Shown: positions 18,477 to 41,162 of the stretch, piece after piece | How the letters are laid out: every line of letters starts with the position of its first letter | How positions within the stretch are numbered: position 1 is the first letter of the stretch | IMG/VR virus record: IMGVR_UViG_3300023174_000046 | Coordinates: 124,001 to 188,000 of that record | DNA length: 64,000 nt | Strand: one strand, 5' to 3' | Made by a program: the position numbers and the translations under genes | Notes under the pieces: model-generated | Seen by the model: the letters and a program-made list of their open reading frames with translations, nothing else | Database searches by the model: none | What the model was told of the DNA's origin: nothing

Positions 18477-18484
18477 TATAAATA
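18477..18484 (+). promoter_or_regulatory. T4-type late promoter TATAAATA (representative of about 18 TAAATA sites)
   Basis: Exact T4 gp55 consensus 5 nt before the ATG; same geometry at 2260, 12577, 13294, 19454, 37127, 38094, 40074, 41609, 44008, 50507. Confidence 0.8.
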
Positions 18485-18751: not shown

Positions 18752-19450
18752 ATGGCAGATATAAGCATAGTCAAAATTAAGGTTCGTAGAGGCACAGACT
18801 CTGATAGAACGCGTGTAATTCTTGATGAAGGAGAGTTAGGATTTACAACGGACACACAGCGCCTTTATGTAGGTGATGGCAATACTCTTGGCGGTGTTAG
18901 TGTTGCAAATAAATTTCAAGGCAGAGGGTTGAGAGGATCATATGGTTCTGCTGTTGTTGGTGATACAGCTTATGATGTTTTACAGAATAATCTTTTCGCT
19001 TTAACAGCTGCTCCTGCTTCTCTTTCTGCAAATTGGACCAATTTAGGACCATTAGTTGATAATACTACACTTGAGTACAACACAACTTGTAAACTTGGCA
19101 TTATTGATCACGCTATTACACGCCAGCAGTTTAATGCAGCGGATATTGTTTATACAGGGTTGTCTGCAACAGGTGATAGCCAGATTACTCTGGATCTCGA
19201 TCAAAATACTTTAAAATTTAATGCTAATAAAGTTTATGTTGATACAACAGTTATTTCAGTTTCTTCTCTTAAGTCTACAGCGTTCGGGTTAAATGTAGGT
19301 AATCTAAGATTTGATGGTCTTTATGTTGTACAGGGTGCTTCTACACTTGCAACTGATCCCACATACATAACATTACCGGTCAAGTCATTGTTCATTCTCA
19401 ATGAACCATACCCATCAAACTTCTATTATCTAATGGTCAAGGCACCTTAA
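18752..19450 (+). CDS. Short tail-fibre protein with an Mtd-N (major tropism determinant N-terminal)-like anchor
   Basis: IKVRRGT...LDEGELGFTTDTQRLYVGDG. Confidence 0.75.
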   Translation: MADISIVKIKVRRGTDSDRTRVILDEGELGFTTDTQRLYVGDGNTLGGVSVANKFQGRGLRGSYGSAVVGDTAYDVLQNNLFALTAAPASLSANWTNLGPLVDNTTLEYNTTCKLGIIDHAITRQQFNAADIVYTGLSATGDSQITLDLDQNTLKFNANKVYVDTTVISVSSLKSTAFGLNVGNLRFDGLYVVQGASTLATDPTYITLPVKSLFILNEPYPSNFYYLMVKAP

Positions 19451-19464
19451 CATTAAATATTTTT

Positions 19465-21399
19465 ATGGCAGTATTTGAAGTAACAGATAAGACAATTCTC
19501 AAGATCCTTGTAAGACGAGGATTAGAAGAAGAGCGTCAAAACGTTCGCCTTGATGAAGGAGAGCTGGGATACACCATTGATTCTAAACGTGTATTTGTTG
19601 GTGATGGGCTAGGTGGCGGAGGCAACGTTGTTGGTAATTTATATCAAGGTGCATTCCCTGATGTAGATACTGTAATAGGTACAGTTGCAGGCTTACAGCC
19701 AGGCGATACTTTTTACGATACAACTGAATCAACACTGTATGCACTCGGTGAAGATGCTGTAACAAAATTTGATATTCACCCACGCTATGAAGATTTTGTT
19801 CTTGAAAAAACAACATCACCTACAGGAAGAGTAAGAATATCTGAAAGTGTTTACGGTAAAAGTGTTGTGGGTGTTACCAATTATCGCAAAGCATTTTTCT
19901 TTGATTATGCTTTGTATGAACCTTTTTACGGTACAAACAGAGTAGTAGAGTTAAACACAAACTATTGGGCTATAACTTCAAAATCTAATTTTGATCCTGC
20001 AAATAATGATGGTGTTTTTTACTTTGGTAATATTGGTAGCATTGTACCAGGTACTAAAAAATCTGATCTAGATTATAGAATCAATATCAATACTGCTGGT
20101 CTCAATAAGGGCGCGCTCATTGTTTACGGAACCGGCACCGATGTGTTTACAATTGGTAGCGGTGGTGAAATTGGCAACGCTCTTGGTGTTACTAGTATAA
20201 TTGGTGCTAGTGGTATTCAGTTTTTCCCTGGAGCAGACAATAAAAACGACCCCACAAAAAGTGCACTCTTTTTAAGTTCTTCTGGTACTGCATATTTTCA
20301 AAAGACAGGCGGTTCAGCATCGCAACCAGCTCTCTTAGTTGATGGGTTTAGCAGATTTACAAACAGTGTAATGATTGATACTAACTTATTGGTAGTAGGC
20401 AATCTAACAGCGCTGGGCGATTTCTCTGTTCTTGATACATTTGTTACAACATCATCTGCTTTGTCTGTTATTAATTCATCACCTAACACTGCCTTTACTG
20501 TAAAACAAGAAGCTAATAATGCTAATTACAATACTGCGCAGTTTATTAATAGCAATTTACCTGCAAATCGAGTATTGATCGACCGCTATTCAAATGCTGT
20601 TTTTGGTCAAGGCTATGGCACACAAAGTAGAGGTAGTCCCATTACAAATACCGCTGCAATGTCAACTGTACTTGTAGCAGGTGGCGTCTTTATTAGAGAC
20701 ATTTCAACTACTAATAATGGTGGTCTTGATGTTAGTGTGCGTGGCAATTCACAACTGCAATCTGGGTTCAATTTTATTGACGGCTCTAATAACGGTACTT
20801 TAATTTCAAAAAATAACGCTACAACAAATTATTACCCGACTGACATGGCATTGTTTGTGGATAGCGTAGCTCCTAACCAAGCTGGAGCCAAGATACTAAG
20901 TAACCCTGCCTATGGTGCAGCCTATCCAACTCTTGTTCTTGCGTCAAATCAAGCAGCTGGGAACGCTAGCCATTATTTGTTTAGTGGCAGGTATAATGGT
21001 TCTGGCGCTGCACCAAACAATGGCACCCAAACATCATTCATTGCTTCAGATGGCAGTTTTCAATTTAACGGAAACGGCACAGTGCTAGGCTATTTGAATG
21101 TAGGTGGCGACGTCACCGCGTTCTATAGCTCGGATGAGAGATTAAAGGATAACGTTCAAGTACTTGAATCACCTCTAGAAAAAATTGACAAGATTCGTGG
21201 TGTAAGTTTTGATTGGTCTAAAGAAGCTCAACATGAAGGTCATGATGTGGGTGTTATTGCACAAGAGATTGAAAAAGTTTTACCGGAGGTTGTAGTAACT
21301 CGTGAAAACGGCATGAAAGCTGTCAAGTATGAAAAGTTAGTACCCCTACTCATTGAAGGTATTAAAGAGTTACACAAATTAATTAAATGCCAGCAATAA
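19465..21399 (+). CDS. Tail fibre with an Mtd-N anchor and a C-terminal peptidase S74 intramolecular chaperone
   Basis: VRRG..LDEGELGYTIDSKRVFVGDG; SDERLKDN...GVIAQEIEKVLPEVV...VKYEKLVPLLIEGIKEL. Confidence 0.9.
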   Translation: MAVFEVTDKTILKILVRRGLEEERQNVRLDEGELGYTIDSKRVFVGDGLGGGGNVVGNLYQGAFPDVDTVIGTVAGLQPGDTFYDTTESTLYALGEDAVTKFDIHPRYEDFVLEKTTSPTGRVRISESVYGKSVVGVTNYRKAFFFDYALYEPFYGTNRVVELNTNYWAITSKSNFDPANNDGVFYFGNIGSIVPGTKKSDLDYRININTAGLNKGALIVYGTGTDVFTIGSGGEIGNALGVTSIIGASGIQFFPGADNKNDPTKSALFLSSSGTAYFQKTGGSASQPALLVDGFSRFTNSVMIDTNLLVVGNLTALGDFSVLDTFVTTSSALSVINSSPNTAFTVKQEANNANYNTAQFINSNLPANRVLIDRYSNAVFGQGYGTQSRGSPITNTAAMSTVLVAGGVFIRDISTTNNGGLDVSVRGNSQLQSGFNFIDGSNNGTLISKNNATTNYYPTDMALFVDSVAPNQAGAKILSNPAYGAAYPTLVLASNQAAGNASHYLFSGRYNGSGAAPNNGTQTSFIASDGSFQFNGNGTVLGYLNVGGDVTAFYSSDERLKDNVQVLESPLEKIDKIRGVSFDWSKEAQHEGHDVGVIAQEIEKVLPEVVVTRENGMKAVKYEKLVPLLIEGIKELHKLIKCQQ

Positions 21400-22058: not shown

Positions 22059-22094
22059 TATTGATTTTTTTGTTTGCATTTGTAAATTATAATA

Positions 22095-23399: not shown

Positions 23400-23401
23400 G
23401 C

Positions 23402-24160
23402 ATGTATACAGACATTCAATTAGTATCTACGCTTAATAAAAAATATCTACCTGGCGCGCGAGCCTTTTTACGAAGTCTAGTCAAGCATAATAAAATTAAT
23501 TATCTTTATAATTTTTTTATTTTTGAAGAAATTAGCAGTTCAGACAAAGAGTCTCTCCAATGCATTTATCCTTCCGTAAATTTTATTGAAATAGATACAG
23601 AAGACTACTCTTACTATAATACTAATGATGTTTTTCGAAATTGGGGGTTCAATTGTTTTAATAGATTTGAGATTTTTACTTTAAAGTGTAAAAAATTGAT
23701 TTTTTTTGATTTAGATATGATTGTATTAGATTCATTAGAAGATATATTTACTAGTGATGTACGCTTTGGTTCTGTCGAAATAGAACCTTTCGGTAGACTA
23801 GATCACCCAACAAAAAGAATGTTTGATGGTGGTTTAATGGTAATCTCAGAAGAGTTTTTAACTCATAAGACAAAAAATAAGTTAATTGAAATATCTAAAC
23901 TGAAAAAATGGTCTAGTGATGAGCCAGTTTTAAATTTATTTTTTGAAAATGATGTTACTTTTTTACCTAAAAAATACAATATATTAAGCTACGAATATAA
24001 CAAACACAAGAATAATTGTAGCGTTTTGCAATATGTCGGTACTAAAAAACCATGGGCAGGTAAAACTATCGAAAGCAATTTTGATAATTATGTAATTAAA
24101 AGAAATAAAATTACAGATCTTATGAAGATACAACACATTTTTAATCAATATGCAAATTAA
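23402..24160 (+). CDS. GT8 glycosyltransferase
   Basis: YLPGA..SL, IFFDLDMIV, FDGGLMV, DEPVLN, YN, YVGTKKPW. Confidence 0.85.
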   Translation: MYTDIQLVSTLNKKYLPGARAFLRSLVKHNKINYLYNFFIFEEISSSDKESLQCIYPSVNFIEIDTEDYSYYNTNDVFRNWGFNCFNRFEIFTLKCKKLIFFDLDMIVLDSLEDIFTSDVRFGSVEIEPFGRLDHPTKRMFDGGLMVISEEFLTHKTKNKLIEISKLKKWSSDEPVLNLFFENDVTFLPKKYNILSYEYNKHKNNCSVLQYVGTKKPWAGKTIESNFDNYVIKRNKITDLMKIQHIFNQYAN

Positions 24161-24893
24161 TTCATTCTATTTTGGTAAAAAATTAAATCTTATGGAACAA
24201 CTCACTATAGTGAGCTTTCTTAATCAGGGGCATAGCTTTAAGCTATATACATATGATAATAATATTTGTGATATCAAACATAATAGTTTTAATATCATTG
24301 ATGCAAATGAAATTTTAGATAAAAAGTACTTCTTTACATATGACGGCAAGGGTGATTGTCCCGCTAATAGCGTTGGTGGTTTTTCAGATATTTTTAGATT
24401 TTCTATTTTAGAAAAAAATCAAGGCTGGTATGTAGATATGGATGTGACTTGTTTGAAAGACTTCAATCATTTAGATCAATTACCATGTGTATTTCGGCCA
24501 AATAAAAATTATGGAGCTGTCGCAAACATTATTAAATGCGAGAACAAGCAGTTAATTAGTGAAATACTAGCCCAGTATAAAGAATGTATAACTCCAATGA
24601 ATAACGAATGGGTTAAACCTCTTAATATTTTTTATGAACTAATTAAAAACCATAATCTAGAAAATTATATAATTGATAAAAAAATATTTGGTGATGATAA
24701 TGCATCGGACCTACTCAACTTTATTAATAAAAATATTTACGAACTTAATAATGTACCTGAATACGCTATACACTGGTGCAATACTGCATGCACAACTGCA
24801 TCTTGGAATAAGCGGCTAAAAATAGACTGGAATAATCCAAGACCTGCGTCCCTGTACTATTGTTTACTTAAAAAGAACGGCTTAATTAATTAG
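24150..24893 (+). CDS. GT32-like DxD glycosyltransferase
   Basis: SFL..GH..LYTY, DANEIL, FSDIFRF..L, GWYVDMDV, HW. Confidence 0.8.
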   Translation: MQINSFYFGKKLNLMEQLTIVSFLNQGHSFKLYTYDNNICDIKHNSFNIIDANEILDKKYFFTYDGKGDCPANSVGGFSDIFRFSILEKNQGWYVDMDVTCLKDFNHLDQLPCVFRPNKNYGAVANIIKCENKQLISEILAQYKECITPMNNEWVKPLNIFYELIKNHNLENYIIDKKIFGDDNASDLLNFINKNIYELNNVPEYAIHWCNTACTTASWNKRLKIDWNNPRPASLYYCLLKKNGLIN

Positions 24894-24895
24894 TT

Positions 24896-25639
24896 ATGAT
24901 ATCGATAGCTTGTGTTTCTGATTCTGGTTATTTACGCTACGCAAAAGCTATGTTTAAATCTTTTAATTACAAACATCAAAAATTACAGAAACATATGCTA
25001 TATGTAGGTAATAAACAAGAGTATGTAAACGAAGCAATTAATATGCATTACGATGGTACACAGCTTTCTGATGTGAAAGATATAATTAAAGATACGAATA
25101 CCGAAGATAATGAGTACAAGCAGTACTTTACAAATAGTACTTTTTTATCAGAAAAAAACTGCTACTGTAATAATCAGAGATTCAAATTCATAAGCAATTT
25201 ATTAGAAGCAAATACAAGAAATTTAATTTTTACAGATGCAGATATGCTATGCAACCGCAATGTAGATTTTTTAAAAGCCATTTCATACAAAAGAGATATT
25301 TGCTTACAACCATATTTTGAAGATAAAAAATATTACAGGACAAATTTTTGCTATATTAATAATACACCTGCGACGAGAGACTTTTTTAAGATGGTTTCTG
25401 TAGGTATAGAGAAAGATTTTGGTCTATTAAAATGGGGTCATACAAAATATTTTACTGAATTAATAAAGCAATCAAATTTAAAGGTATTAGACCTGCCAGA
25501 AAATTTTATTGATACTAATTATAGTGCTGATAGTTATATCTGGTCAGGAGAAAGTTTTAGAAAAGATAAAAATATGGTAAACCTATCAACTAAAAATTTT
25601 AATTATATTAACAAATATGAAAGTTATTATGAATCATGA
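24896..25639 (+). CDS. GT-A nucleotide-diphospho-sugar transferase
   Basis: RF..., FTDADM DxD motif; position within the GT cluster. Confidence 0.6.
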   Translation: MISIACVSDSGYLRYAKAMFKSFNYKHQKLQKHMLYVGNKQEYVNEAINMHYDGTQLSDVKDIIKDTNTEDNEYKQYFTNSTFLSEKNCYCNNQRFKFISNLLEANTRNLIFTDADMLCNRNVDFLKAISYKRDICLQPYFEDKKYYRTNFCYINNTPATRDFFKMVSVGIEKDFGLLKWGHTKYFTELIKQSNLKVLDLPENFIDTNYSADSYIWSGESFRKDKNMVNLSTKNFNYINKYESYYES

Positions 25640-26453
25640 ATTAATAATGGAGGTGAGCTTATATGTAGGGTGTAGTGTTAATTGCAGTTATTGTCCACAG
25701 TTTAGCTTGTTTAAACTATCAAAAAAGCGTAAAATGGGTATTGATGATTATAAAATTCTTTTAGATAAAATTCCTTGCACAACACATATAGGGTTTATTG
25801 GTATGAGTGAACCACTACTCTACAAAGAGTTTGATAAAATTATACAGTATACGCTCCACAAAAAACATAAAATGATATGCTTTACAACCTTACCCGAGAA
25901 GATACAAGCCAATGCTGATATATTTCTCAATAAAAATCTTTGGTATAGAAGATCGGTGCATATTAAAGATGAGAACATGTTGGATAAGACTATTACACAT
26001 CAGTATCTTAATAATTTAGAAAAATACTTTGATCAAATTGATATTAACGATATGAGCAAACAAAACTCCATCACAATATTATCAGATAATATAGATTCAC
26101 AAATTGAAAATTTAATATCAAAATACAACTTACAAGAATACGTCTTTAGAACACAACCTTTTAAACGCATAAGAGCTCCTATCACCTATAAAACACCTGT
26201 AATACCGTCAAAATTATCAGGCAAAATTTATTGTTCTCAGGGTCACGATAAAATACAACACTTATTGCCCGACGGTGATGTTGTGCTGTGTTGTATGGAT
26301 GTTGAAAAGATGCATGTTCTTGGCAACCTCTTTAAAAACTCCTACCAAGACCTATATAATTCAAAGGAATATAAGGAAATACAGCAAGGCTATGAAGATG
26401 ATAGAGTTAAAACTATATGCAGATCATGTATTTTTGCAAAAAACGTAATATGA
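25617..26453 (+). CDS. Radical SAM enzyme with a SPASM/twitch domain
   Basis: CSVNCSYC (CxxxCxxC), GMSEP, C...PDGDVVLCCMD...LGN...CRSC. Confidence 0.9.
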   Translation: MKVIMNHELIMEVSLYVGCSVNCSYCPQFSLFKLSKKRKMGIDDYKILLDKIPCTTHIGFIGMSEPLLYKEFDKIIQYTLHKKHKMICFTTLPEKIQANADIFLNKNLWYRRSVHIKDENMLDKTITHQYLNNLEKYFDQIDINDMSKQNSITILSDNIDSQIENLISKYNLQEYVFRTQPFKRIRAPITYKTPVIPSKLSGKIYCSQGHDKIQHLLPDGDVVLCCMDVEKMHVLGNLFKNSYQDLYNSKEYKEIQQGYEDDRVKTICRSCIFAKNVI

Positions 26454-27241
26454 AGATTTGTTTTTCATACAGTGTTGATGAGAACTACTATTCATACGTT
26501 AAAAATAGTATTAATTCGCTTACCAAAAATGCTCCAAACGTATATGCAAATATTGATCTTGTTGATTTCTACCAAACATATATTAATTTTGTCGACAGCA
26601 ATAAGATAAAATTCAATTACATTTTTCCTAAAGTACCGGCTAACAAAATTACTATTAAAAATAAAGGTTGTGAAGCATTAACAGAGAGAATAGTCAGTCT
26701 CACAGGTGCATATGCAAATCTACGCAAAGTTTACAACATTTATAGCCTACTATTAACTAATGAGTATGATTACGTGGTTAATATGGATGCAGATAATTTA
26801 ATTCTCAAGAATGTAGAGGACTATATCTCCAGATTACCACAAGGTTTCGATATTCACATCAAATATAATGAAGGTAAACTAGAAGGTGATGAGCTAGTAA
26901 GAAGAAAGGATAATTTTAAACATTTTAACGCAGTAGGGGTTGAATTAATCGACAAGCATTTCCGGGAAGGATGCATGGTAGTTAGCAATACTGAGAACTC
27001 ACGTAAATTTTTTAAGCTAGTGGCAGAGAATATCTTATCAAAAATTGTATGGTACGGTGATTCATACTGGATAACATATGCTTATTCTTTAATGAAAGAC
27101 GAAATTAAAATAAATCGTCTCCCTGAGGATTTTGTAATTTATGATCTCAATGAAACCAACATTGATACTGCATATGTTTGTAGTGGTTATGGCATGAATA
27201 AACATAGTAATTTATATAAACAGTTAATAGTTGATGAATAA
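26450..27241 (+). CDS. GT-A glycosyltransferase (start probably MKICF at 26450)
   Basis: SVDENY, NMDADNLI DxD motif, WYGD; ATGA overlap with the upstream stop. Confidence 0.55.
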   Translation: MKICFSYSVDENYYSYVKNSINSLTKNAPNVYANIDLVDFYQTYINFVDSNKIKFNYIFPKVPANKITIKNKGCEALTERIVSLTGAYANLRKVYNIYSLLLTNEYDYVVNMDADNLILKNVEDYISRLPQGFDIHIKYNEGKLEGDELVRRKDNFKHFNAVGVELIDKHFREGCMVVSNTENSRKFFKLVAENILSKIVWYGDSYWITYAYSLMKDEIKINRLPEDFVIYDLNETNIDTAYVCSGYGMNKHSNLYKQLIVDE

Positions 27242-27992
27242 ATTTTTAAATTTATACAATAGCTATATTAAGCTATCTAACACACATCAGTTTGAAAAAA
27301 ATAATACTAAGTTTATAGGTATGTTCGGTAAAACATATGAAAACGGCAAAATAATCACAACAAAATTATACTTTAATATAGAAAAGTCTATTAACTGTGA
27401 CTCCTTTCCGTATCAAAATAAAATTAACCTATATAAAAAATACGAACCCTTTGTAGATTATACACGCACTTTCAGCAACTGTATTGCAGTTAAAAAAGAT
27501 TTAACAAAAAATAATTTTACCGAATACTTTCATCTTAAATTTAACAACCAGTTCAAGTTTGAAGAGCTTGATACTTTTCATGGTATTAATTTAAATGATT
27601 ACAAAAAAGGTATATCTGTAGAATTCAATAAAACAAAAGAAGACATAAAACGATATTATTATATAAGTGACATTTTCGATATACAGACAATTTTCAATCA
27701 ATTTAATATTAAAGAGAATGCATCTGCATTAAAATATATCGAGTTTACATACAATCCAACTAAGAGCATTTTTATATATAACGATACAGAAAAGCTTTTA
27801 ACGGGCATAACACATAACTGCCCTGGTGATATTGTACTTGATGTGCATGCCATGACTGACAGCTACGGGCTTAAGCCATGTTTATTCGGAAAATACTATG
27901 GTACACCAAAATATACAGTATATTGGGATCTAAATTTTAACAATTTTAATTTGGGTAGCGACTTATTTAAATATATTACTGAGCAAAGTTGA
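27231..27992 (+). CDS. Hypothetical protein, possibly an ABBA/PatF-like prenyltransferase fold
   Basis: Recurring K-x-Y strands (TKLYF, KRYYY, YTVYW) and GISVEF; weak resemblance only. Confidence 0.25.
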   Translation: MMNKFLNLYNSYIKLSNTHQFEKNNTKFIGMFGKTYENGKIITTKLYFNIEKSINCDSFPYQNKINLYKKYEPFVDYTRTFSNCIAVKKDLTKNNFTEYFHLKFNNQFKFEELDTFHGINLNDYKKGISVEFNKTKEDIKRYYYISDIFDIQTIFNQFNIKENASALKYIEFTYNPTKSIFIYNDTEKLLTGITHNCPGDIVLDVHAMTDSYGLKPCLFGKYYGTPKYTVYWDLNFNNFNLGSDLFKYITEQS

Positions 27993-28016
27993 TATTATAA
28001 GTAGTTATTGTAGTAT
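27989..28016 (+). promoter_or_regulatory. sigma70-like promoter opening the amidinotransferase operon
   Basis: TTGATA-N16-TAGTAT, 6 nt before the ATG. Confidence 0.6.
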
Positions 28017-28022
28017 AAACTT

Positions 28023-29120
28023 ATGGAGTGTCCTGTCAATAGTCATAATGAATGGGATGTTTTGGAGGAAGTTATTGTGGGTAATGGATTTCCAGAAAAA
28101 ATACCTATTGATGATATGTCTTTCCGTTTATTTTTTCACGATAATATATACGGCAAACCTACAACTTACTTTTCCGAACGCTGGGGCATGTGTTCTAAGA
28201 TAATAGATGAGCATAATGAAGATTTAGAAAATTTTGTTAGTCTACTGCAACAGAATAACGTAACAGTAAGGAGACCGAAGAAACCTACCAGTATAAAGAA
28301 GATAAAAACCTTGGGCTGGAATAGTATAAATTACCCCGCACTCAATGTAAGAGACCTAACCATGATAGTTGGTAGTACGATTATTGAAACACCTGTTTCT
28401 GCGCGCTGGAGACAGTTTGAAAATGATTATATGAAACATTTATTTTTAGAATACTTTAATAAAGGTGCAAGATGGTTGAATGCACCGCGTCCTATCGCTA
28501 CAGACAACTCATACGATTTGAATGAAGTGTATAAAACAGAAGGTGCAGAAGCATTTTATTTTGATATTAAAGATAAGTTTAGTCACGAATTAGATTGTGG
28601 ATATGAAATAATGTTTGACGCAGCAAACTGTCAACGTCTAGGTGATAAAATTCTTTTTAATGCACCTACTAAAAATGAGATGCTTGGAGTAAAGTGGTTA
28701 CAAGACATGTTAGGGGAAGCATATACAATCTGGCCATGCAATGTAACAGATCATCATATAGACTCAGTATTTTTACCTTTACGCCCTGGATTGGCATTAA
28801 TTACACTTGATATTGTTGATAAGTTGCCGTGTGAATTACAAAAATGGGATTTTATACGCATACCTGCAGAGCTTGATTCCGATAAAAACATAAACTACAC
28901 ACCGCTAGCATCTGAAAAAATTTATTGTAACGTACTTTCTTTAAATCCAAATAAAATTATTTGTTTGCCTGAGTATTACTCTTTACTATCATCAAAGCTC
29001 AAGCCTTACAACATTGAAGTTATACCTTCACAAATACGTTATAGTCGGTTATTTGGTGGTGGTCATCACTGTCTCTCGTTAGATATACGAAGACAAAGTA
29101 AGTTAGAAAGCTATTTTTAA
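28023..29120 (+). CDS. L-arginine-dependent amidinotransferase (glycine/inosamine-phosphate amidinotransferase family)
   Basis: PVNSHNEWDVLEEVIVG, RD, FDAAN, HIDS..PLRPG, GGGHHC.SLD.RR with the catalytic Asp/His/Cys. Confidence 0.92.
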   Translation: MECPVNSHNEWDVLEEVIVGNGFPEKIPIDDMSFRLFFHDNIYGKPTTYFSERWGMCSKIIDEHNEDLENFVSLLQQNNVTVRRPKKPTSIKKIKTLGWNSINYPALNVRDLTMIVGSTIIETPVSARWRQFENDYMKHLFLEYFNKGARWLNAPRPIATDNSYDLNEVYKTEGAEAFYFDIKDKFSHELDCGYEIMFDAANCQRLGDKILFNAPTKNEMLGVKWLQDMLGEAYTIWPCNVTDHHIDSVFLPLRPGLALITLDIVDKLPCELQKWDFIRIPAELDSDKNINYTPLASEKIYCNVLSLNPNKIICLPEYYSLLSSKLKPYNIEVIPSQIRYSRLFGGGHHCLSLDIRRQSKLESYF

Positions 29121-29884
29121 TGAAATTATTAGTTTTAATATTTTCTTGCAAGAAAAATATAGACCGTTGCCTGGCAATACAACAGTCATGGCTGCAAGAT
29201 CTCAAGCAAAACCATATTGAGTATTTTTTTGTTTCTGCAGATGATCTAGAATTACAAGAACCGTCAATTAAACTAGAAAATTTTACTGAATGTTACGAAC
29301 AATTACCGCTTAAAACATTTCTTACTCTCAAACAAATTTACAATTATAAGTTTACACATCTTGTTAAAACAGATGATGATGTTTTCTTGAATATTAAAAA
29401 GTTAATTGCAACACTTCCGAAAAATGTTGATTATTCAGGCAAATTTAACCTCAAAGGTGTTGATGCGTCCATGATACACTATTATAAATGTAGTGGAGAA
29501 TTTAGAACACCAAAAAAGAAAGCAAGCCACGACTACGCAGAAGGGGGCATGTACATACTCAGTAAGAAAGCTGTTAAATATATTGTAAGTTGTGATCAGG
29601 AAACTTTCATTAATTCACCTAAAACTTATAAAGGTGAAGATGTTGCAGTTGGTGAACTACTTAATAATGAAAAATTTACTAAATTAGATCTTACAGATAG
29701 CTTATCTGACAAACTTAATATGGATATCACAAGAAATGGTGTCTCGTATCACCCGGTGCATAAATCGTTGATGCACAAATTATATAAAGCTAAGACAACG
29801 AACGACAGAATAGATATATTAGTTGCAAATACAGCAAAGAATGACTATAATAAACGGGATATATTTATTAGAAAATATGAGTAA
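29120..29884 (+). CDS. GT31 galactosyltransferase/Fringe-like glycosyltransferase
   Basis: YEQLPLKT, KTDDDVF, YAEGGMYILS, EDVAVG. Confidence 0.85.
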   Translation: MKLLVLIFSCKKNIDRCLAIQQSWLQDLKQNHIEYFFVSADDLELQEPSIKLENFTECYEQLPLKTFLTLKQIYNYKFTHLVKTDDDVFLNIKKLIATLPKNVDYSGKFNLKGVDASMIHYYKCSGEFRTPKKKASHDYAEGGMYILSKKAVKYIVSCDQETFINSPKTYKGEDVAVGELLNNEKFTKLDLTDSLSDKLNMDITRNGVSYHPVHKSLMHKLYKAKTTNDRIDILVANTAKNDYNKRDIFIRKYE

Positions 29885-30527
29885 TAATGTTTTAGTGCTA
29901 GCACCTCACGGTGATGACGAAGTTTTAGGCTGTGGTGGCAGCATTGCCAAGCATATTGAATTGGGTGATCAAGTTACAGTTGCTTTTATTAAAGCTGCGT
30001 ACGATGAGAGATCCACAGTACAGCTTCAAAACACGATAAGTGCGCAAAAAGTATTAGATTATGAGAGAATGATTATTATGAATTTAGATGAGAATACTAT
30101 TCATAACAAACTTGAGTTTATAAAAGAGCTTGAAGTAATCGTGAATACGGTAAAACCTGATACAATTTATTCAACTTTTTATGGCGATTTGCATCAAGAT
30201 CATCGCGCATTATTTGAAGCGCTCAATACAGCAGCGCGTGTATGGGCAGACCATCTTGTTAAAAAAATTCTACTTTGTGAGACAATATCTTCAACTGATC
30301 AAGGTATTATTCGTAATATTCATCCGTTTGTACCCAATTATTATGTAACATTAAGTGAACACCATATAGACAAAAAGATGAATGCATTATCATGCTATGA
30401 AAGGGAAATTAAAAAAGAATGTCACCCAAGATCAATAGAGCATGTTTTGAATGTAGCAAAATCTCGAGGTCGTGAGATAAGAAACTCTTATGCAGAAGCA
30501 TTTATGCTTATGAGATTTATAGATTAA
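29877..30527 (+). CDS. PIG-L/LmbE-family N-acetylglucosaminyl deacetylase (start probably MSNNV)
   Basis: APHGDDEVLGCGG, DLHQDH, AEAF. Confidence 0.9.
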   Translation: MSNNVLVLAPHGDDEVLGCGGSIAKHIELGDQVTVAFIKAAYDERSTVQLQNTISAQKVLDYERMIIMNLDENTIHNKLEFIKELEVIVNTVKPDTIYSTFYGDLHQDHRALFEALNTAARVWADHLVKKILLCETISSTDQGIIRNIHPFVPNYYVTLSEHHIDKKMNALSCYEREIKKECHPRSIEHVLNVAKSRGREIRNSYAEAFMLMRFID

Positions 30528-30528
30528 C

Positions 30529-31308
30529 ATGAATACTTGCAGACATAATAATAAAAATTATAATCTCAACGTAGCTAGTTATACAGAAGAAGAAAATTTT
30601 TTAAAAGAATTTATAGCTAAAGGTTACGTTTTCTTAGAGAATGTTGTTAACCTCAATTACAACTATAAAGAGAGATCTGAATATTCTAGAATAAAGCAAA
30701 TGGATGTTATTGATAATTTCTTTCCTGATAACCCCGAATATTTTCAAATTTATAATAGTTTTAAAAAATCAAAAATATTTGATATACTTTCCAATAATTT
30801 AACAAGCTTAAGACTGTATAATTTTATGTGTTTTCGTCTATACAAAGGGAACGAATGCTCATCATTGCACCGTGATGATGATTTTGCTATAACGTATACC
30901 CTCAAAACACCATTTGTAATTTGCTGGATGCCTTTGACAGACGTCTCTCTTGCGGCTGGTCCTCTTGCAATTGCAGAAAGAACCAAGACTGTGTATACAC
31001 AGCATGATATCAAAGAGGGTGAAAAATATATTCAAAAATATTTAAAAAGTAACAACGTTATGGAGAATATTGATGGTATACGCAATGCCATGCTAGAGGA
31101 AGAAGATTATAAAATTTCTGTACATAGAGATTTCGATACATTAATCTCACGTGATCTCAAAAAAGGTGATGTTGTTGTAATGAATCACGATATTGTTCAT
31201 GGATCATTAGATAATAATAATTTGATTCGGTCTTCTATTGATTTGAGATTGTTTTATAACTGTGACACAAATAATAATCTGCTCAAAAGAGTATCTCTAG
31301 ATACATGA
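30529..31308 (+). CDS. PhyH-family 2OG-Fe(II) dioxygenase
   Basis: LHRD, WMPLTDV..GPL, GDVVV..HGS..N..RSSIDLR. Confidence 0.85.
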   Translation: MNTCRHNNKNYNLNVASYTEEENFLKEFIAKGYVFLENVVNLNYNYKERSEYSRIKQMDVIDNFFPDNPEYFQIYNSFKKSKIFDILSNNLTSLRLYNFMCFRLYKGNECSSLHRDDDFAITYTLKTPFVICWMPLTDVSLAAGPLAIAERTKTVYTQHDIKEGEKYIQKYLKSNNVMENIDGIRNAMLEEEDYKISVHRDFDTLISRDLKKGDVVVMNHDIVHGSLDNNNLIRSSIDLRLFYNCDTNNNLLKRVSLDT

Positions 31309-32723
31309 ATAAAAGCATAGTTATTTTGGGTGGCGGTACTGCTGGTTGGATGAGCGCGCTTTTCTTTAAGAAAGCATACCCCCAATCAAAAGTTACTGTA
31401 GTTGAGTCCGAAGAGATAGGTATTATAGGCGTGGGCGAAAGCACCACACCGTATTTTATAGAAATGTTAGATTTTCTTGATATAAATGTTTTAGATATTT
31501 TAAAAGCAAGTGATATCGCTTTTAAAACAGGTGTAAAATTTGATGGATGGGGTAAAAGTATTTTCTACCACCCTTTTAATCTGAACGATGAACACTATAA
31601 TCATGATACTGCTCTTATTCAATACTATTTGAAAAATAAAGATACAAATGTGTTTAAAACATTAAACCCGTTAGTAACAATTACTGAACAAGGTAAGATT
31701 CAAAAAATTAAAAAAAACCTTCCACATAACGATTTTGCGGTTCATATTGATGCTTGCAAAACAAGCATTGCTTTAAAAAGTATTGCTCTCTCACGAGGCA
31801 TTCAGCTTGTACAGGGTGTAGTTGGTAGTGTAGAGGTAAAAGATAATAACGTTGCTTCTTTAATCTTAAATAGTGGGCATAGAGTTTGTGGTGATTTCTT
31901 TGTAGATTGTTCAGGATTTAATAGGGTTCTTGCAAATAAGTTCAATATTAAATTTTTAAAATTTAACGATTTATTGACAAATACAGCTATACCTTGCCCT
32001 ATTAAGAAGACTTTTTTTGAACCATATACAACCGCAAAAACCTTGAATTATGGCTGGACATGGAAGATACCTACACACTCTAGAACAGGTACCGGTTATG
32101 TTTTTTCAAGAGATTACACTGATATAGATAGTGCAAAAAAAGAATTTTATACATATTTGAAAACTGTTACAGATGAAGAAATTAACCTAAATAAAATTAT
32201 CTTTTTTGAAACTGGGACTCTTGAAAAAATTCATTTTAATAATGTATTAGCTGTTGGGTTAGCGTCACATTTTCTTGAACCACTAGAAGGCACATCTCTC
32301 GCTATATCTGCGATTATATTATTTGAGTTTATCAAACAAAAAGAAGGCTTTAATAGTAAAATACTACAAAAAATTTTACAGATAAAAGACTTTATTGTAT
32401 TACATTATTTAACTAAAAAAACACAGAGTAATTTTTGGTTGGACGCAAGCAAAAAAGCAAAAGAAAATAATTTAATTCAAAAACTCCTGTCTAGCAAAAC
32501 ATTAAATTTTGATTTATTTAAAGACAATGATTATTATTTTAGCTTTTTAAATCATCTCAACTTTTTACAGAATCTCGATGCGGTTGATACCAACACAAGT
32601 GTATCAACAGAACGCTATAAGACTGATTTTAGCTATATTAAGCTTTTAAAGTCTAAGGCATGGCATTACAGTCATGTTAAAAACGCTGTAGATTATAAAA
32701 CATATTACGAGCAGTTTCTATGA
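31305..32723 (+). CDS. Flavin-dependent tryptophan halogenase-family protein
   Basis: GGGTAGW, IGVGEST, DCSGF, WTWKIP (WxWxIP), FLEPLE. Confidence 0.9.
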   Translation: MNKSIVILGGGTAGWMSALFFKKAYPQSKVTVVESEEIGIIGVGESTTPYFIEMLDFLDINVLDILKASDIAFKTGVKFDGWGKSIFYHPFNLNDEHYNHDTALIQYYLKNKDTNVFKTLNPLVTITEQGKIQKIKKNLPHNDFAVHIDACKTSIALKSIALSRGIQLVQGVVGSVEVKDNNVASLILNSGHRVCGDFFVDCSGFNRVLANKFNIKFLKFNDLLTNTAIPCPIKKTFFEPYTTAKTLNYGWTWKIPTHSRTGTGYVFSRDYTDIDSAKKEFYTYLKTVTDEEINLNKIIFFETGTLEKIHFNNVLAVGLASHFLEPLEGTSLAISAIILFEFIKQKEGFNSKILQKILQIKDFIVLHYLTKKTQSNFWLDASKKAKENNLIQKLLSSKTLNFDLFKDNDYYFSFLNHLNFLQNLDAVDTNTSVSTERYKTDFSYIKLLKSKAWHYSHVKNAVDYKTYYEQFL

Positions 32724-33397
32724 AGATATTAGAAGAAATAGACCGCAAATATAGTTTTGATAAACTTAAAAAAGTTATTGACGAGTTTGGTCTCTGCCCT
32801 AACTGGCGAGCAATTTTGGATAACAATAAGTCTATTAATTTAGAGTATAAAGTATTACTTTTTTACAAAAAAATCTTTCTTAAATATAAAATTGATAAAA
32901 CTAAAAATATTTTAGATGTAGGGTCAGGGCTCTGCCACAATTACATGATCAGCAATATAATTGGAGCAAAATGTACCTGTCTTGAAAAAATACCATGCTC
33001 CACAGGCACAGATGAAAGCAATCTGTACGCATTATTTCATAAAATTTTAAATATAGAGTCAACACTTTATTATAACATTAATTCACCCAACGTTTCTCTC
33101 CCAGGAAAATTTGATTATATACTATTACTCAACCAGACTTTCGATGAAAAACAAAACGCTAATGGTGATATAACTGTGTGGAGCATTGAGGATTGGGAAA
33201 CGTTTATTAAAAACCTGAACATCAACTTAAACCCTGGTGGCAAGATACTTATCAATTGGACGTTGCAACAGTTAAATGATGTGCATGAAAATGACCCGCT
33301 TTATACTAGCAAAAATGGAAAGATTGTTAAGTATCAGCACAATAAAAACTTTAAATTTTTTAAAAAACACCCAGAATTTAATGTGAGGTTTATATAA
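32720..33397 (+). CDS. Class I SAM-dependent methyltransferase
   Basis: ILDVGSG, FDYI, LNPGG. Confidence 0.8.
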   Translation: MKILEEIDRKYSFDKLKKVIDEFGLCPNWRAILDNNKSINLEYKVLLFYKKIFLKYKIDKTKNILDVGSGLCHNYMISNIIGAKCTCLEKIPCSTGTDESNLYALFHKILNIESTLYYNINSPNVSLPGKFDYILLLNQTFDEKQNANGDITVWSIEDWETFIKNLNINLNPGGKILINWTLQQLNDVHENDPLYTSKNGKIVKYQHNKNFKFFKKHPEFNVRFI

Positions 33398-33400
33398 TAC

Positions 33401-33634
33401 ATGGATATTGAATTGTTTGGATGGTTTTCTACATTCTTTCTTTGGGGTGCTGCTCTACCCAAGCAAAGGCATGTATTGCATCTCTGTACAGCCATAGCAG
33501 CTTTGTCTCGTGCGGTCTATATTATAACCTTGTACCTGGGGCCTACAGGTAATCTCGCTAGGCCATTGATAATAAATTGGATAGCGCTATTTGTTATTCA
33601 CCTATATCAGTACTTTGTATATAAAAATAAATAA
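33401..33634 (+). CDS. Small membrane protein with about 3 TM segments
   Basis: Hydrophobic segments; ELFGW start; within the operon. Confidence 0.55.
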   Translation: MDIELFGWFSTFFLWGAALPKQRHVLHLCTAIAALSRAVYIITLYLGPTGNLARPLIINWIALFVIHLYQYFVYKNK

Positions 33635-33637
33635 TAA

Positions 33638-33826
33638 ATGGTAAGTTTGAGTGCAATTAACGATTTTTTTGATCTGTCTAAACCATGCCCCTCAGAAATA
33701 AAAAGATGTCGACAACTTAGAAACGATTACCGACTTGAACTTCGAAATATGAAGCAATGCACAAGCTGTGCAACACGAGTAGTAAAAAACGTTTATATTA
33801 ATAAAATAAATCAATGCTCGAATTAA
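33638..33826 (+). CDS. Small Cys-rich protein, paralogue 1
   Basis: FFD..PCP..I..C..LR.DY..EL...C..C pattern shared with the next ORF. Confidence 0.7.
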   Translation: MVSLSAINDFFDLSKPCPSEIKRCRQLRNDYRLELRNMKQCTSCATRVVKNVYINKINQCSN

Positions 33827-34017
33827 CTAAAATAGAAAGGTTTTTTGATATGAATCAGCCTTGCCCGTCAGATATACCTGATTGTGAACAACATAGAAAA
33901 GACTATTTAAATAAATTAGAAGAATTGAAAAAACAAAACGGTTGCAGTCCTTGCAAGATGCGAGGGATCAGAAACCATTATCTTCAAATTATTACAGGAG
34001 CGTATGGAGCTAAGTAA
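33814..34017 (+). CDS. Small Cys-rich protein, paralogue 2
   Basis: FFDMNQPCPSDIPDCEQHRKDY...GCSPC. Confidence 0.7.
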   Translation: MLELTKIERFFDMNQPCPSDIPDCEQHRKDYLNKLEELKKQNGCSPCKMRGIRNHYLQIITGAYGAK

Positions 34018-35096: not shown

Positions 35097-35132
35097 TATT
35101 GCATTTCTATCTTTCCAATTTAATATAACATT

Positions 35133-35333: not shown

Positions 35334-35336
35334 TAT

Positions 35337-41161: not shown

Positions 41162-41162
41162 C

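What the first reader, a model, noticed from the sequence alone, without database searches (positions are those of the whole stretch)
27989..33397. Amidinotransferase-GT31-deacetylase-dioxygenase-halogenase-methyltransferase operon: possible guanidino-sugar or halogenated decoration pathway
Seen: six tightly coupled genes behind their own promoter, with catalytic motifs intact. Established: PIG-L enzymes remove N-acetyl from GlcNAc to free an amine, and StrB1-type amidinotransferases move an amidino group from Arg to an amino-cyclitol. Inference: de-N-acetylation then amidination would give a cationic guanidino sugar on the virion glycan or host surface, with further hydroxylation, halogenation and methylation. 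A small-molecule product is the alternative. This resembles a secondary-metabolite cluster inside a phage.
Basis: partly seen in the sequence, partly recalled or inferred. Interest (0 to 1): 0.78.

Follow-up and report, generated by a model that had tools for sequence, protein, structure and literature searches.

The report
Phage sugar-amidination island plus halogenase cassette
A freshwater T4-like phage carries, next to its tail-fibre genes, a sugar-building island whose conserved core (glycosyltransferase, sugar de-N-acetylase, arginine-dependent amidinotransferase) probably makes a positively charged guanidino sugar. The halogenase, dioxygenase and methyltransferase beside it are separate add-ons, not steps of the same pathway.

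Summary
The six genes are real, tightly packed and have intact catalytic motifs. They are not an operon with its own promoter. They sit inside a co-directional run of at least 17 kb, from the tail-fibre genes to just before the portal gene.

Comparison of 49 distinct gene neighbourhoods splits the six genes into three units:
- **Core: amidinotransferase, GT31 and PIG-L.** The amidinotransferase is nearest to StrB1. It travels with PIG-L in 38 of 49 neighbourhoods, with radical-SAM/SPASM genes in 41, and with NDP-sugar dehydratase and a short DegT aminotransferase in 35 each. Cellular relatives in Halobacteriovorax, DPANN archaea and Sulfurovum show parts of the same set. This supports amidination of an unmasked sugar amine, giving a guanidino sugar.
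- **PhyH–halogenase pair.** It is mobile: absent from close relatives, inserted at a different position in others, and found alone elsewhere in a related phage.
- **Methyltransferase.** It is optional.

The carrier of the glycan (host envelope, virion protein or a soluble product) is unresolved. The genome has no cyclitol synthase and no hydroxymethylase for DNA glycosylation. This is a new variant of the known phage glycan islands, with possibly new sugar chemistry.

The parts
18477..18484 (+). TATAAATA, a T4-late-promoter-like octamer ahead of the tail-fibre/glycan gene run. It is the only one within 18-38 kb.
   Evidence: There are 5 in the window against 10.5 expected, so it is not significant by itself. 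Function is inferred only.
18752..21399 (+). Tail-fibre genes (232 aa and 644 aa) that head the co-directional run.
   Evidence: PHROG tail-fibre hits. Orthologues in L011-L013 carry Mtd_N and Peptidase_S74.
23402..25639 (+). Three GT-A type glycosyltransferase genes: GT8, GT32 (Gly_transf_sug) and a 247-aa GT8-like protein.
   Evidence: Pfam. Homologues of the 247-aa protein give weak GT8 hits.
25617..26453 (+). Radical SAM/SPASM enzyme (278 aa). It is the most constant partner of the amidinotransferase.
   Evidence: Pfam SPASM 7e-12 and Radical_SAM. CxxxCxxC and C-terminal Cys are invariant. rSAM is present in 41 of 49 neighbourhoods. The only informative PDB hit is BtrN, and it is marginal at E 0.0025.
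26417..27241 (+). Probable GT-A nucleotide-sugar transferase (274 aa).
   Evidence: ESM-Atlas neighbours include GT8/Nucleotid_trans clusters of phages, score 0.97. There is no Pfam hit.
27231..27992 (+). ABBA (PT-barrel) prenyltransferase-fold protein (253 aa), directly upstream of the amidinotransferase.
   Evidence: AF2 model pLDDT 93.8. Foldseek top hit is DciF, an arginine bis-prenyltransferase, E 3.7e-7. VIA-align Z is 15.6 and all 50 best chains are ABBA prenyltransferases. It is adjacent to the amidinotransferase in L002, L011, L012 and L042.
28023..29120 (+). L-arginine-dependent amidinotransferase (365 aa), nearest to StrB1.
   Evidence: invariant D199, H245, D247, C350.
29120..29884 (+). 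GT31/Fringe-type glycosyltransferase (254 aa).
   Evidence: Pfam Galactosyl_T 2.9e-12 and Fringe 2.2e-6. DDD and EDV motifs.
29877..30527 (+). PIG-L/LmbE-family N-acetylglucosaminide deacetylase. The ATG at 29877 is preferred over the TTG at 29823.
   Evidence: Pfam PIG-L 1.7e-16. BshB1 model 8e-14. PDB BcZBP 1.7e-13 and BshB1. Metal-binding motifs.
30529..31308 (+). PhyH-family 2OG/Fe(II) dioxygenase (259 aa), the first gene of the mobile pair.
   Evidence: Pfam PhyH 1.5e-7. HxD...H triad. It is the only PhyH in the genome.
31305..32723 (+). Flavin-dependent halogenase (472 aa), the second gene of the mobile pair.
   Evidence: Pfam 8.6e-84. PrnA 2.5e-49 and VirX1 1.7e-37. All four catalytic motifs are present. 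It aligns only to PrnA residues 6-448 of 538, so the C-terminal substrate module differs.
32720..33397 (+). Probable class I SAM-dependent methyltransferase (225 aa), an optional gene.
   Evidence: plus motif I. Its orthologue in L011 is 41% identical. It is absent from L012, L042 and L091.

Best explanation
The window belongs to an uncultured freshwater T4-like myovirus. Between its tail-fibre genes and its portal gene lies a glycan-building island that is probably transcribed with the late structural genes.

**Proposed mechanism of the core.** A glycosyltransferase, GT31 in this lineage, adds an N-acetylhexosamine to a growing glycoconjugate. The PIG-L enzyme removes the N-acetyl group. The StrB1-like amidinotransferase moves an amidino group from L-arginine onto the freed amine through its Cys350 thio-amidine intermediate. 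The result is a cationic 2-guanidino (N-amidino) hexosamine. The radical-SAM/SPASM enzyme and several GT-A transferases belong to the same ancient module. In most related phages the module also holds an NDP-hexose 4,6-dehydratase, a short DegT aminotransferase and an RmlD-like reductase, which supply a second sugar amine.

**Separate units.** The PhyH-halogenase pair is an autonomous two-gene cassette that has landed inside this island. The methyltransferase is a further optional gene. Their substrate is unknown and need not be the guanidino sugar.

**Shown and inferred.** Gene identities, intact motifs and the co-occurrence pattern are shown. The acceptor amine, the order of steps and the final carrier are inferred. 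The carrier is most likely a host-envelope glycan or a virion protein.
For: - **Amidinotransferase identity and triad:**. Both the single sequence and the family profile rank StrB1 above SxtG, HsvA and AGAT.
- **PIG-L identity:** its nearest characterised relatives are GlcNAc-glycoside deacetylases, namely BshB1, BcZBP and diacetylchitobiose deacetylase.
- **Co-occurrence over 49 distinct viral neighbourhoods:** PIG-L 38, rSAM 41, SDR 35, short DegT 35, RmlD-like 20.
- **Co-divergence:** amidinotransferase and PIG-L pairwise identities give Spearman 0.85.
- **Contiguity:** amidinotransferase, GT31 and PIG-L are contiguous in the window, L002, L012, L042 and L013. In L011 and L091 only the PhyH-halogenase insertion separates them.
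- **Neighbour identities:** LegB/RmlB-like dehydratase, LegC/PseC-like aminotransferase, RmlD-like reductase and PseF-like cytidylyltransferase.
- **Cellular relatives (at most 38% identity) repeat parts of the pattern:** Halobacteriovorax has the fullest set (rSAM, PIG-L and SDR). Most DPANN loci, Sulfurovum, Nitrospira and the Alphaproteobacteria loci have a DegT, some with rSAM or SDR. A few relatives show none of these partners.
- **The same theme occurs in cultured phages:** CP220 has the amidinotransferase flanked by rSAM genes and two GT-A genes (PMC2853527). S-SCSM2R has it among GTs, a short DegT and an rSAM (PMC12801897).
- **This genome has no DegT,** so PIG-L is the only phage-encoded way found here to expose a sugar amine.
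- **Independence of PhyH-halogenase and the methyltransferase:**
- **Stability in nature:** a strain about 94% identical, from another lake study, keeps the full order.
Against: - No biochemical data exist for any member of this amidinotransferase clade, and the acceptor is inferred from neighbours only.
- As far as I know and could find, guanidino sugars are not documented in glycans (searches found none).
- PIG-L lies a median of about 2.3 kb from the amidinotransferase in the wider family. It could serve another step.
- In most relatives a DegT-made amine is an equally good acceptor.
- The amidinotransferase could instead act on a non-sugar amine such as a polyamine (like HsvA) or lysine (like AmtA).
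- The ABBA-fold and halogenase genes are more typical of small-molecule or peptide chemistry.
- Late co-transcription is inferred from gene packing alone.
Confidence: 0.5

Rival explanations
1. The island makes a soluble aminoglycoside-like or pseudo-oligosaccharide small molecule. This would be a guanidinylated amino sugar or cyclitol glycoside, possibly prenylated, halogenated and methylated, that acts on the host or on competitors.
For: - The nearest characterised relatives come from aminoglycoside pathways: StrB1 and, marginally, BtrN for the rSAM. That the PIG-L family includes the aminoglycoside deacetylase BtrD is my own knowledge.
- ABBA prenyltransferase fold and a flavin halogenase are hallmarks of secondary metabolism.
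- The S-SCSM2R authors and Iyer et al. proposed antibiotic or secondary-metabolite roles for similar phage genes (PMC12801897, PMC7824862).
Against: - The 217-kb genome has no DHQS/2-deoxy-scyllo-inosose synthase family and no inositol-1-phosphate synthase family.
- None of the genes examined around the island is an exporter or resistance gene.
- Five or six GT-A enzymes of LPS-core-like families (GT8, GT32, GT31; GT9 and KDO/Pse-type enzymes in relatives) fit a glycoconjugate better.
- The island sits among late structural genes.
Confidence: 0.2
2. One reading: all six genes form one pathway, so the same product is amidinated, hydroxylated, halogenated and methylated.
For: - The genes are tightly overlapping in the window and in L002.
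- The order is kept in a strain about 94% identical.
- The PhyH-halogenase pair has inserted inside the amidinotransferase module twice, at different positions (window; L011 and L091). This could reflect selection for co-expression.
Against: - L012 and L042 have amidinotransferase-GT31-PIG-L without the pair.
- L090 has an orthologous PhyH-halogenase pair (56% PhyH identity) with no amidinotransferase, PIG-L or GT in the 14 kb held.
- L091 lacks the methyltransferase.
- Halogenases are common in cyanophages and a pelagiphage, where only one of the 70 records with a halogenase hit (S-SCSM2R) also holds a detectable amidinotransferase.
Confidence: 0.12
3. The enzymes modify virion proteins directly. 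Examples would be lysine to homoarginine by the amidinotransferase, prenylation of Tyr/Trp/Arg by the ABBA enzyme, Trp/Tyr halogenation, hydroxylation, rSAM/SPASM cross-links, and O-glycosylation by the GTs.
For: - The island lies beside tail-fibre genes. A tail-fibre homologue lies within 10 kb in 13 of 49 neighbourhoods, and a Peptidase_S74 gene sits inside the sugar cluster in L016.
- The best structural matches of the ABBA protein are peptide (cyanobactin) prenyltransferases.
- rSAM/SPASM enzymes are typical peptide maturases.
- A second, more distant amidinotransferase of S-SCSM2R was detected in purified virions (PMC12801897).
- A Pro/Thr-rich ORF lies at 36743-37129.
Against: - The constant partners of the amidinotransferase are NDP-sugar enzymes, not peptide-processing enzymes.
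- No precursor peptide co-varies with the modules. The small ORFs downstream are also present in relatives that lack the cassettes.
Confidence: 0.1
4. The island hypermodifies phage DNA with a cationic sugar, in the manner of glucosyl- or arabinosyl-hydroxymethylcytosine.
For: - T4-like phages are the classic case of glycosylated DNA (my own knowledge).
- A cationic modification would neutralise DNA charge.
- One relative (L017) carries GTP cyclohydrolase I and PTPS near the cluster.
Against: - The genome has no thymidylate-synthase-family gene, hence no dCMP or dUMP hydroxymethylase.
- The GT families here (GT8, GT31, GT32) are glycan or LPS types.
- The island sits in the late structural region, not with the nucleotide-metabolism genes.
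Confidence: 0.04

Closest known systems
Radical-SAM plus 'glycine amidinotransferase' module of Campylobacter phages CP220/CPt10 (Timms et al. 2010, PMC2853527)
   Same: It has a homologous amidinotransferase (34% identity) flanked by rSAM genes and two nucleotide-sugar transferase-fold genes. It was described as an interchangeable, non-essential module.
   Different: - By my profiles CP220 has no PIG-L, SDR or DegT within 10 kb (L071), and it has no halogenase.
- It has many more rSAM genes.
- Its function was never assigned.
'Antibiotic synthesis genes' of Synechococcus phage S-SCSM2R (PMC12801897)
   Same: The amidinotransferase (30% identity) lies among GTs, a short DegT ('AHBA synthase'), an rSAM maturase and 2OG oxygenases. 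A halogenase lies about 7 kb away.
   Different: - No PIG-L or GT31 is annotated beside it.
- The authors interpreted the genes as antibiotic synthesis, without comparative or biochemical support.
Cyanophage LPS/capsule clusters and the halogenase-2OG-methylase-carbamoyltransferase cluster of S-SSM6a/S-SSM7/P-SSM2 (Iyer et al. 2021, PMC7824862)
   Same: These are phage islands of sugar-modifying enzymes with a flavin halogenase, 2OG dioxygenases and methyltransferases. The proposed role is to decorate surface polysaccharide or to make a secondary metabolite.
   Different: - Those clusters have no amidinotransferase, PIG-L or ABBA gene.
- The 2OG oxygenases beside the halogenases of HTVC008M and P-SSM2 show no detectable pairwise similarity to this PhyH.
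- This phage has no psbA and comes from lakes.
Streptidine branch of streptomycin biosynthesis (StrB1), with butirosin enzymes BtrN and BtrD (pathway details are my own knowledge)
   Same: StrB1 is the best solved relative. The logic of oxidise, transaminate, then amidinate, and the pairing of a PIG-L deacetylase with GTs, are paralleled here.
   Different: - No cyclitol-forming enzyme was found.
- A kinase for an inosamine-phosphate-type acceptor was not looked for.
- The BtrN similarity is marginal.
- The context is a phage structural region.
GlcNAc-transfer, PIG-L deacetylation, then N-functionalisation, as in bacillithiol, mycothiol and GPI anchors (my own knowledge)
   Same: A GT followed by a PIG-L enzyme exposes a glucosamine amine for a dedicated third enzyme. 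The PIG-L here is nearest to BshB1.
   Different: The third enzyme here is an amidinotransferase, not a cysteine ligase or acyltransferase.
VirX1, the cyanophage flavin-dependent halogenase (PDB 6qgm; cited in PMC10452541)
   Same: It belongs to the same family and carries the same catalytic motifs (E 1.7e-37).
   Different: This enzyme is about 60 residues shorter and is closer to PrnA by score. Its natural substrate, like that of VirX1, is unknown.

Membership tests
Arginine-dependent amidinotransferases (AGAT/StrB1/SxtG/HsvA) | Full-length sequence similarity to characterised members | tested here: met
   StrB1 E 7.7e-53 over residues 5-364. SxtG, HsvA and AGAT score 1e-36 to 2e-42. The family profile gives 243-286 bits.
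Arginine-dependent amidinotransferases (AGAT/StrB1/SxtG/HsvA) | Cys-His-Asp catalytic triad | tested here: met
   C350, H245 and D199/D247 align with the StrB1 and SxtG motifs. They are invariant in 11 diverse homologues.
Arginine-dependent amidinotransferases (AGAT/StrB1/SxtG/HsvA) | Match to a curated family model (Pfam/NCBIfam) | tested here: not met
   There is no Pfam or NCBIfam hit at E 0.01-0.1. The direct PDB matches make this a model-coverage gap, not evidence against membership.
Arginine-dependent amidinotransferases (AGAT/StrB1/SxtG/HsvA) | Amidino transfer from L-arginine to an amine | not testable with these tools
   This needs an enzyme assay.
StrB1-type inosamine-phosphate specificity (aminocyclitol pathway) | A cyclitol-forming enzyme in the same genome | tested here: not met
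   The 217-kb genome has no DHQ_synthase/DOIS family and no Inos-1-P_synth family.
StrB1-type inosamine-phosphate specificity (aminocyclitol pathway) | Phylogenetic placement with StrB1 rather than AGAT, CyrA or SxtG | tested here: inconclusive
   StrB1 is the top hit by 30-50 bits. No tree with reference sequences could be built because no reference sequences were available by id.
PIG-L/LmbE N-acetylglucosaminide deacetylases | Family model above cut-off, plus the metal-binding motifs (H-x-D-D and H-x-x-H) | tested here: met
   Pfam 61.3 bits against a cut-off of 28.2. PHGDDE and HQDH are present. BcZBP and BshB1 are the best PDB matches.
GT31 glycosyltransferases | Family model above cut-off, plus the DxD motif | tested here: met
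   Galactosyl_T 47.2 bits against a cut-off of 23. DDD85-87 and EDV173-175 are present.
PhyH-type 2OG/Fe(II) dioxygenases | Family model above cut-off, plus the HxD...H facial triad (not the HxA/G of the halogenase variants) | tested here: met
   PhyH 32.3 bits against a cut-off of 22. H114, D116 and H234 are present.
Flavin-dependent (tryptophan-type) halogenases | GxGxxG, catalytic Lys, WxWxIP and the conserved Glu | tested here: met
   Pfam 282 bits. The alignment to PrnA shows K74 = K79, WTWKIP and EPLE.
Flavin-dependent (tryptophan-type) halogenases | C-terminal tryptophan-binding module of free-Trp halogenases | tested here: not met
   The protein is 472 aa against 511-550 aa. The alignment stops at PrnA residue 448 of 538. 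Free tryptophan is therefore not implied as substrate.
Class I SAM-dependent methyltransferases | Family model match or Rossmann-type fold with motif I | tested here: inconclusive
   There is no Pfam, NCBIfam or PDB sequence hit. Motif I (ILDVGSG) is present, and all ten best Atlas neighbours with a family are Methyltransf_11/23/25 at score 0.97.
ABBA (PT-barrel) prenyltransferases (gene 27231-27992) | Alpha-beta-beta-alpha barrel fold | tested here: met
   pLDDT 93.8. Z is 15.6 to DciF, and all 50 best chains are ABBA prenyltransferases.
ABBA (PT-barrel) prenyltransferases (gene 27231-27992) | Prenyl-diphosphate-dependent alkylation | not testable with these tools
   Invariant Lys/Arg/Tyr residues fit a diphosphate-binding barrel, but their position in the barrel was not checked.
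Operon with its own promoter | Promoter upstream of the first gene and a boundary after the last | tested here: not met
   The upstream gap is 30 nt, promoter-like sites are at chance level, and no + strand terminator-like site lies at either end. Genes continue with gaps of 3 nt or overlaps on both sides.

The most novel reading that the evidence does not exclude
The amidinotransferase clade defines an unrecognised, widespread sugar N-amidination pathway that produces guanidino sugars. It would occur in aquatic T4-like phages, Campylobacter phages, DPANN archaea and predatory bacteria. In this phage lineage, the adjacent ABBA-fold enzyme, whose best structural match is an arginine-guanidine prenyltransferase, would go on to prenylate the new guanidine. 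The result would be a lipidated cationic glycan on the tail fibres or the host envelope.

I rate the first half alone (guanidino sugars as a new glycan modification) at about 0.35-0.4.
Probability: 0.07. Interest if true: 0.88.

Novelty: new variant of a known kind. Interest (0 to 1): 0.6.

Why it matters
If the core really makes a guanidino sugar, this would be a new natural glycan modification. It would carry a permanent positive charge and would be encoded by many aquatic phages and some cellular lineages.

It would also give a function to the amidinotransferase and radical-SAM modules noticed in Campylobacter phages in 2010 and in a cyanophage in 2025, which were never explained.

A cationic sugar on a tail fibre or on the infected cell's envelope could change adsorption, superinfection or grazing.

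The enzymes (amidinotransferase, PIG-L, a compact rSAM, an ABBA-fold protein and a short flavin halogenase) would be useful biocatalysts.

The analysis also shows that gene packing alone overstates pathway unity in phage hypervariable islands.

Tried and rejected
- **Nucleotide search of the region against cultured phages** found no match. Single-protein scans for the halogenase and PhyH in viral contigs found only the near-identical contig.
- **Own promoter:** rejected.
- **Orthologous PhyH-halogenase cassette shared with HTVC008M and P-SSM2:** rejected. Those 2OG oxygenases show no significant similarity to this PhyH. The recurrence is at superfamily level only.
- **Cyanophage identity:** no psbA. 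The portal is only about 34% identical to cyanophage g20.
- **DNA-sugar modification:** no thymidylate-synthase-family gene.
- **Aminocyclitol pathway:** no DOIS/DHQS or inositol-phosphate synthase families.
- **Small ORFs downstream as precursor peptides for the cassettes:** rejected. They persist in relatives without the cassettes.
- **Read laying** gave no trustworthy deletion joints (sides of 21-28 letters). It gave only one 222-nt metatranscriptome contig on the amidinotransferase gene, too weak to show transcription.
- **Literature searches** for amidinotransferases in glycan pathways or for guanidino sugars found nothing relevant.
- **A tree with StrB1, AGAT, CyrA and SxtG** could not be built for lack of reference sequences by id.

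Full report
**What is there.** The window is bases 124001-188000 of a 217,413-bp IMG/VR virus record that CheckV rates complete. It encodes a T4-type portal, gp13- and gp15-like proteins and tail fibres. The portal is about 34% identical to cyanophage g20 and the genome has no psbA. The sequence recurs in lake and freshwater metagenomes from several studies. It is therefore an uncultured freshwater T4-like myovirus with an unknown host.

**The six genes.** The six ORFs of the finding exist as described.
- The 365-aa protein has no Pfam hit. It matches StrB1 at E 7.7e-53, SxtG at 2e-42, HsvA at 1e-39 and AGAT at 1e-36 over its full length. The Asp, His and Cys catalytic residues are conserved, and they are invariant in 11 diverse homologues.
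- GT31/Fringe, PIG-L, PhyH and Trp_halogenase all exceed Pfam cut-offs.
- All expected motifs are present. The PhyH has the hydroxylase-type HxD...H triad.
- The halogenase has GxGxxG, the catalytic Lys, WxWxIP and EPLE. It is about 60 residues shorter than free-tryptophan halogenases and aligns only to PrnA residues 6-448.
- The last protein has no model hit. It carries motif I, and its best protein-atlas neighbours are uniformly class I methyltransferases.
- PIG-L most likely starts at ATG 29877, not at the TTG at 29823.

- There is no sign of a separate promoter. The upstream gap is 30 nt. Sigma-70-like sites are at chance level, 100 found against 99.7 expected. The only T4-late-type TATAAATA nearby is at 18477-18484, ahead of the tail-fibre genes.
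- The six genes are a slice of a co-directional run from 18752 to 35537 in which every gap is at most 36 nt.
- Upstream in the same run are GT8, GT32, a GT8-like protein, a radical-SAM/SPASM enzyme and a probable GT-A protein.
Its AlphaFold model (pLDDT 93.8) is an ABBA prenyltransferase barrel. The Foldseek top hit is the arginine bis-prenyltransferase DciF, at E 3.7e-7. VIA-align gives Z 15.6, and all 50 best chains are ABBA prenyltransferases.
- The island (22-36 kb) has 29-33% G+C, against 36-43% in the head-gene region.

**Do the six genes belong together?** I collected amidinotransferase homologues from viral contigs and assemblies. I scored their neighbourhoods with profiles built from the loci themselves, cross-checked by Pfam and NCBIfam for representative loci.

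Among 49 distinct architectures, the partners occur as follows:

| Partner near the amidinotransferase | Architectures (of 49) |
|---|---|
| Radical-SAM/SPASM (1 to 8 copies) | 41 |
| PIG-L | 38 |
| NDP-hexose dehydratase/epimerase (SDR) | 35 |
| Short (~207-aa) DegT aminotransferase | 35 |
| RmlD-like reductase | 20 |
| GT31 | 7 |
| ABBA protein | 6 |
| PhyH, halogenase, methyltransferase | 2 each |

Amidinotransferase and PIG-L identities co-vary across loci (Spearman 0.85 over 703 pairs). The pairs are not independent, so this is descriptive only.

Within the window's own sub-lineage the arrangements are:

| Locus | Arrangement around the amidinotransferase (AmT) |
|---|---|
| Window and L002 (98% AmT identity) | AmT-GT31-PIG-L-PhyH-Hal-MT |
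| L012 (72%) and L042 (69%) | AmT-GT31-PIG-L, then the conserved small ORFs |
| L013 (61%) | GT31-AmT-PIG-L |
| L011 (78%) | AmT-PhyH-Hal-(82 aa)-GT31-PIG-L-MT |
| L091 | AmT-PhyH-Hal-GT31-PIG-L, without MT |

The L011 proteins are true orthologues of the window's: PhyH 60%, halogenase 65% and methyltransferase 41% identical. In L090 an orthologous, overlapping PhyH-halogenase pair (56% PhyH identity) sits at a different place in a related T4-like phage. It has no amidinotransferase, PIG-L or GT in the 14 kb held.

The six genes are therefore three units:
- a conserved amidinotransferase-GT31-PIG-L core, which is part of a much older amidinotransferase/PIG-L/rSAM/sugar module;
- a mobile PhyH-halogenase pair;
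- an optional methyltransferase.

A strain about 94% identical, from another study, keeps the whole order on a 15.6-kb contig. The present arrangement is thus stable over short evolutionary distances.

**What the core most likely does.** The constant company of the amidinotransferase is sugar chemistry. The neighbours are a LegB/RmlB/GalE-like dehydratase, a LegC/PseC-like aminotransferase and an RmlD-like reductase. Individual loci add a PseF-like cytidylyltransferase, a DAHP/KDO8P-synthase-like aldolase, an asparagine-synthase-like amidotransferase and a GT9.

Cellular relatives reach only 38% identity at most and repeat parts of the association:
- Halobacteriovorax has three or four rSAM genes directly upstream of the amidinotransferase. 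Downstream it has a PIG-L that matches the phage PIG-L profile at 1e-51 to 1e-54, another rSAM and an SDR.
- A Sulfurovum MAG has the short DegT directly after the amidinotransferase.
- Most DPANN archaeal loci have a DegT within 1-3 kb, and two also have an rSAM.
- Nitrospira and Alphaproteobacteria MAGs have SDR-DegT upstream.
- A few relatives (Prochlorococcus, Pseudanabaena, Pirellulales, Xanthobacteraceae) show none of these partners.

Two cultured phages carry variants:
- Campylobacter phage CP220 has the amidinotransferase between rSAM genes and two GT-A genes. This was noted as an interchangeable module in 2010 (PMC2853527).
- Synechococcus phage S-SCSM2R has it among GTs, a short DegT and an rSAM. 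These were called 'antibiotic synthesis genes' in 2025 (PMC12801897).

The window's genome has no DegT at all. The only phage-encoded way found here to expose a sugar amine is PIG-L, whose nearest characterised relatives deacetylate GlcNAc glycosides.

The simplest reading is the well-known logic of transfer HexNAc, deacetylate with a PIG-L enzyme, then functionalise the amine. That this logic operates in bacillithiol, mycothiol, GPI and aminoglycosides is my own knowledge. Here amidination from arginine would be the third step, giving a guanidino hexosamine. The gene identities and associations are shown. The acceptor and the product are inferred.

**Where the product goes.** This is unresolved.
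- *For a glycoconjugate:* there are five or six GT-A genes of families typical of LPS cores and glycoproteins. The island lies inside the late structural run. It is close to tail-fibre genes: a homologue lies within 10 kb in 13 of 49 architectures, and a Peptidase_S74 gene sits inside the cluster in L016.
- *For a soluble product:* the nearest characterised enzymes come from aminoglycoside-type pathways (StrB1, and marginally BtrN), and the ABBA and halogenase genes fit small-molecule chemistry. Against it, the genome lacks both cyclitol-synthase families.
- *Against DNA glycosylation:* the genome has no thymidylate-synthase-family hydroxymethylase.

**The PhyH-halogenase pair.** Flavin halogenases are common in marine T4-like phages (70 phage records). 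They often sit beside a 2OG oxygenase, but those oxygenases are not detectably similar to this PhyH. A cyanophage enzyme, VirX1, is a proven halogenase with an unknown natural substrate (cited in PMC10452541). Iyer et al. described a cyanophage cluster with a halogenase, 2OG oxygenases and methylases, and proposed capsule decoration or a secondary metabolite (PMC7824862). Nothing here ties the pair's substrate to the guanidino sugar beyond its having inserted into that island twice.

**The ABBA protein.** It is adjacent to the amidinotransferase in five architectures and within 5 kb in another. Cyanobactin-type ABBA enzymes prenylate Tyr, Trp, His and the guanidine of arginine (PMC12371840). 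Prenylation of a newly made guanidine is therefore an attractive idea, but it is purely speculative.

**Verdict.**
- This is a new variant of the known phage glycan and secondary-metabolism islands. Its core is widely conserved, uncharacterised, and may make a new kind of cationic sugar.

Noticed in passing
window 36743-37129 (+): A GTG-start ORF whose first ~55 residues are almost pure Pro/Thr repeats (TPTPTVTPT...), a mucin-like stretch of the kind that is often O-glycosylated. It is conserved at 77% over 79 aa in L002.
   Followed up: no
window 33638-33826 and 33814-34017 (+): Two overlapping paralogous small ORFs (62 and 67 aa) share a Cys-rich pattern (F-D-x-x-x-P-C-P-S ... C ... C-x-x-C). 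ORFs of similar size sit in the same position in L012 and L091, whether or not the halogenase cassette is present.
   Followed up: partly
window 34320-35096 (+): A 258-aa NDP-sugar dehydrogenase homologue matches only part of the N-terminal domain and the central domain, and lacks the C-terminal domain. L002 keeps it at the same length with 91% identity. It may be a truncated but maintained gene.
   Followed up: partly
L003 8890-9990 and 9998-11116: Two tandem amidinotransferase paralogues (49-55% identical to the window's) lie in one phage contig. This recalls the two amidination steps of streptidine.
   Followed up: no
L084 924-7800; L079; L036 4298-8001 (Halobacteriovorax): Large tandem arrays of radical-SAM/SPASM genes lie directly upstream of the amidinotransferase: up to 8 in a phage contig, and 4 in a predatory bacterium.
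   Followed up: partly
G000:C1:194024-195999 (outside the window, - strand): Two adjacent genes match the LCIB/LCIC beta-carbonic-anhydrase family (E 4e-20 and 6e-31). This is an unusual auxiliary gene pair for a phage without psbA.
   Followed up: no
G000:C1:52190-55459 and 189521-190486 (outside the window): The genome has further sugar genes elsewhere. One is an SDR epimerase/dehydratase near a protein with an RXYLT1_C-like match. Another is a stand-alone GDP-mannose-4,6-dehydratase-like SDR.
   Followed up: partly
window 28054-28275: A 222-nt contig from a lake metatranscriptome library lies on the 5' part of the amidinotransferase gene with 12 differences. This is weak and may be DNA carry-over or a relative.
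   Followed up: partly
window 42333-43946 (+); L012 20282-21092: The window ORF is an RCC1/WD40-type repeat protein (PHROG hits to 1e-59). In a relative, a 1,286-aa protein combines such repeats with a T4 gp15-like domain.
   Followed up: no
L012 19791-20240; L091 20762-20801: A Tn7 TnsA-like endonuclease N-domain gene follows the gp13-like gene in relatives. The window has a 167-aa ORF at the corresponding place (41112-41615), which I did not check.
   Followed up: no
L013 15197-16459; L017 14972-16207: Asparagine-synthase-like amidotransferases lie in some related islands. From my own knowledge, this enzyme type makes acetamidino sugars in bacteria, so amidine-type sugar decoration may be a wider theme there.
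   Followed up: no
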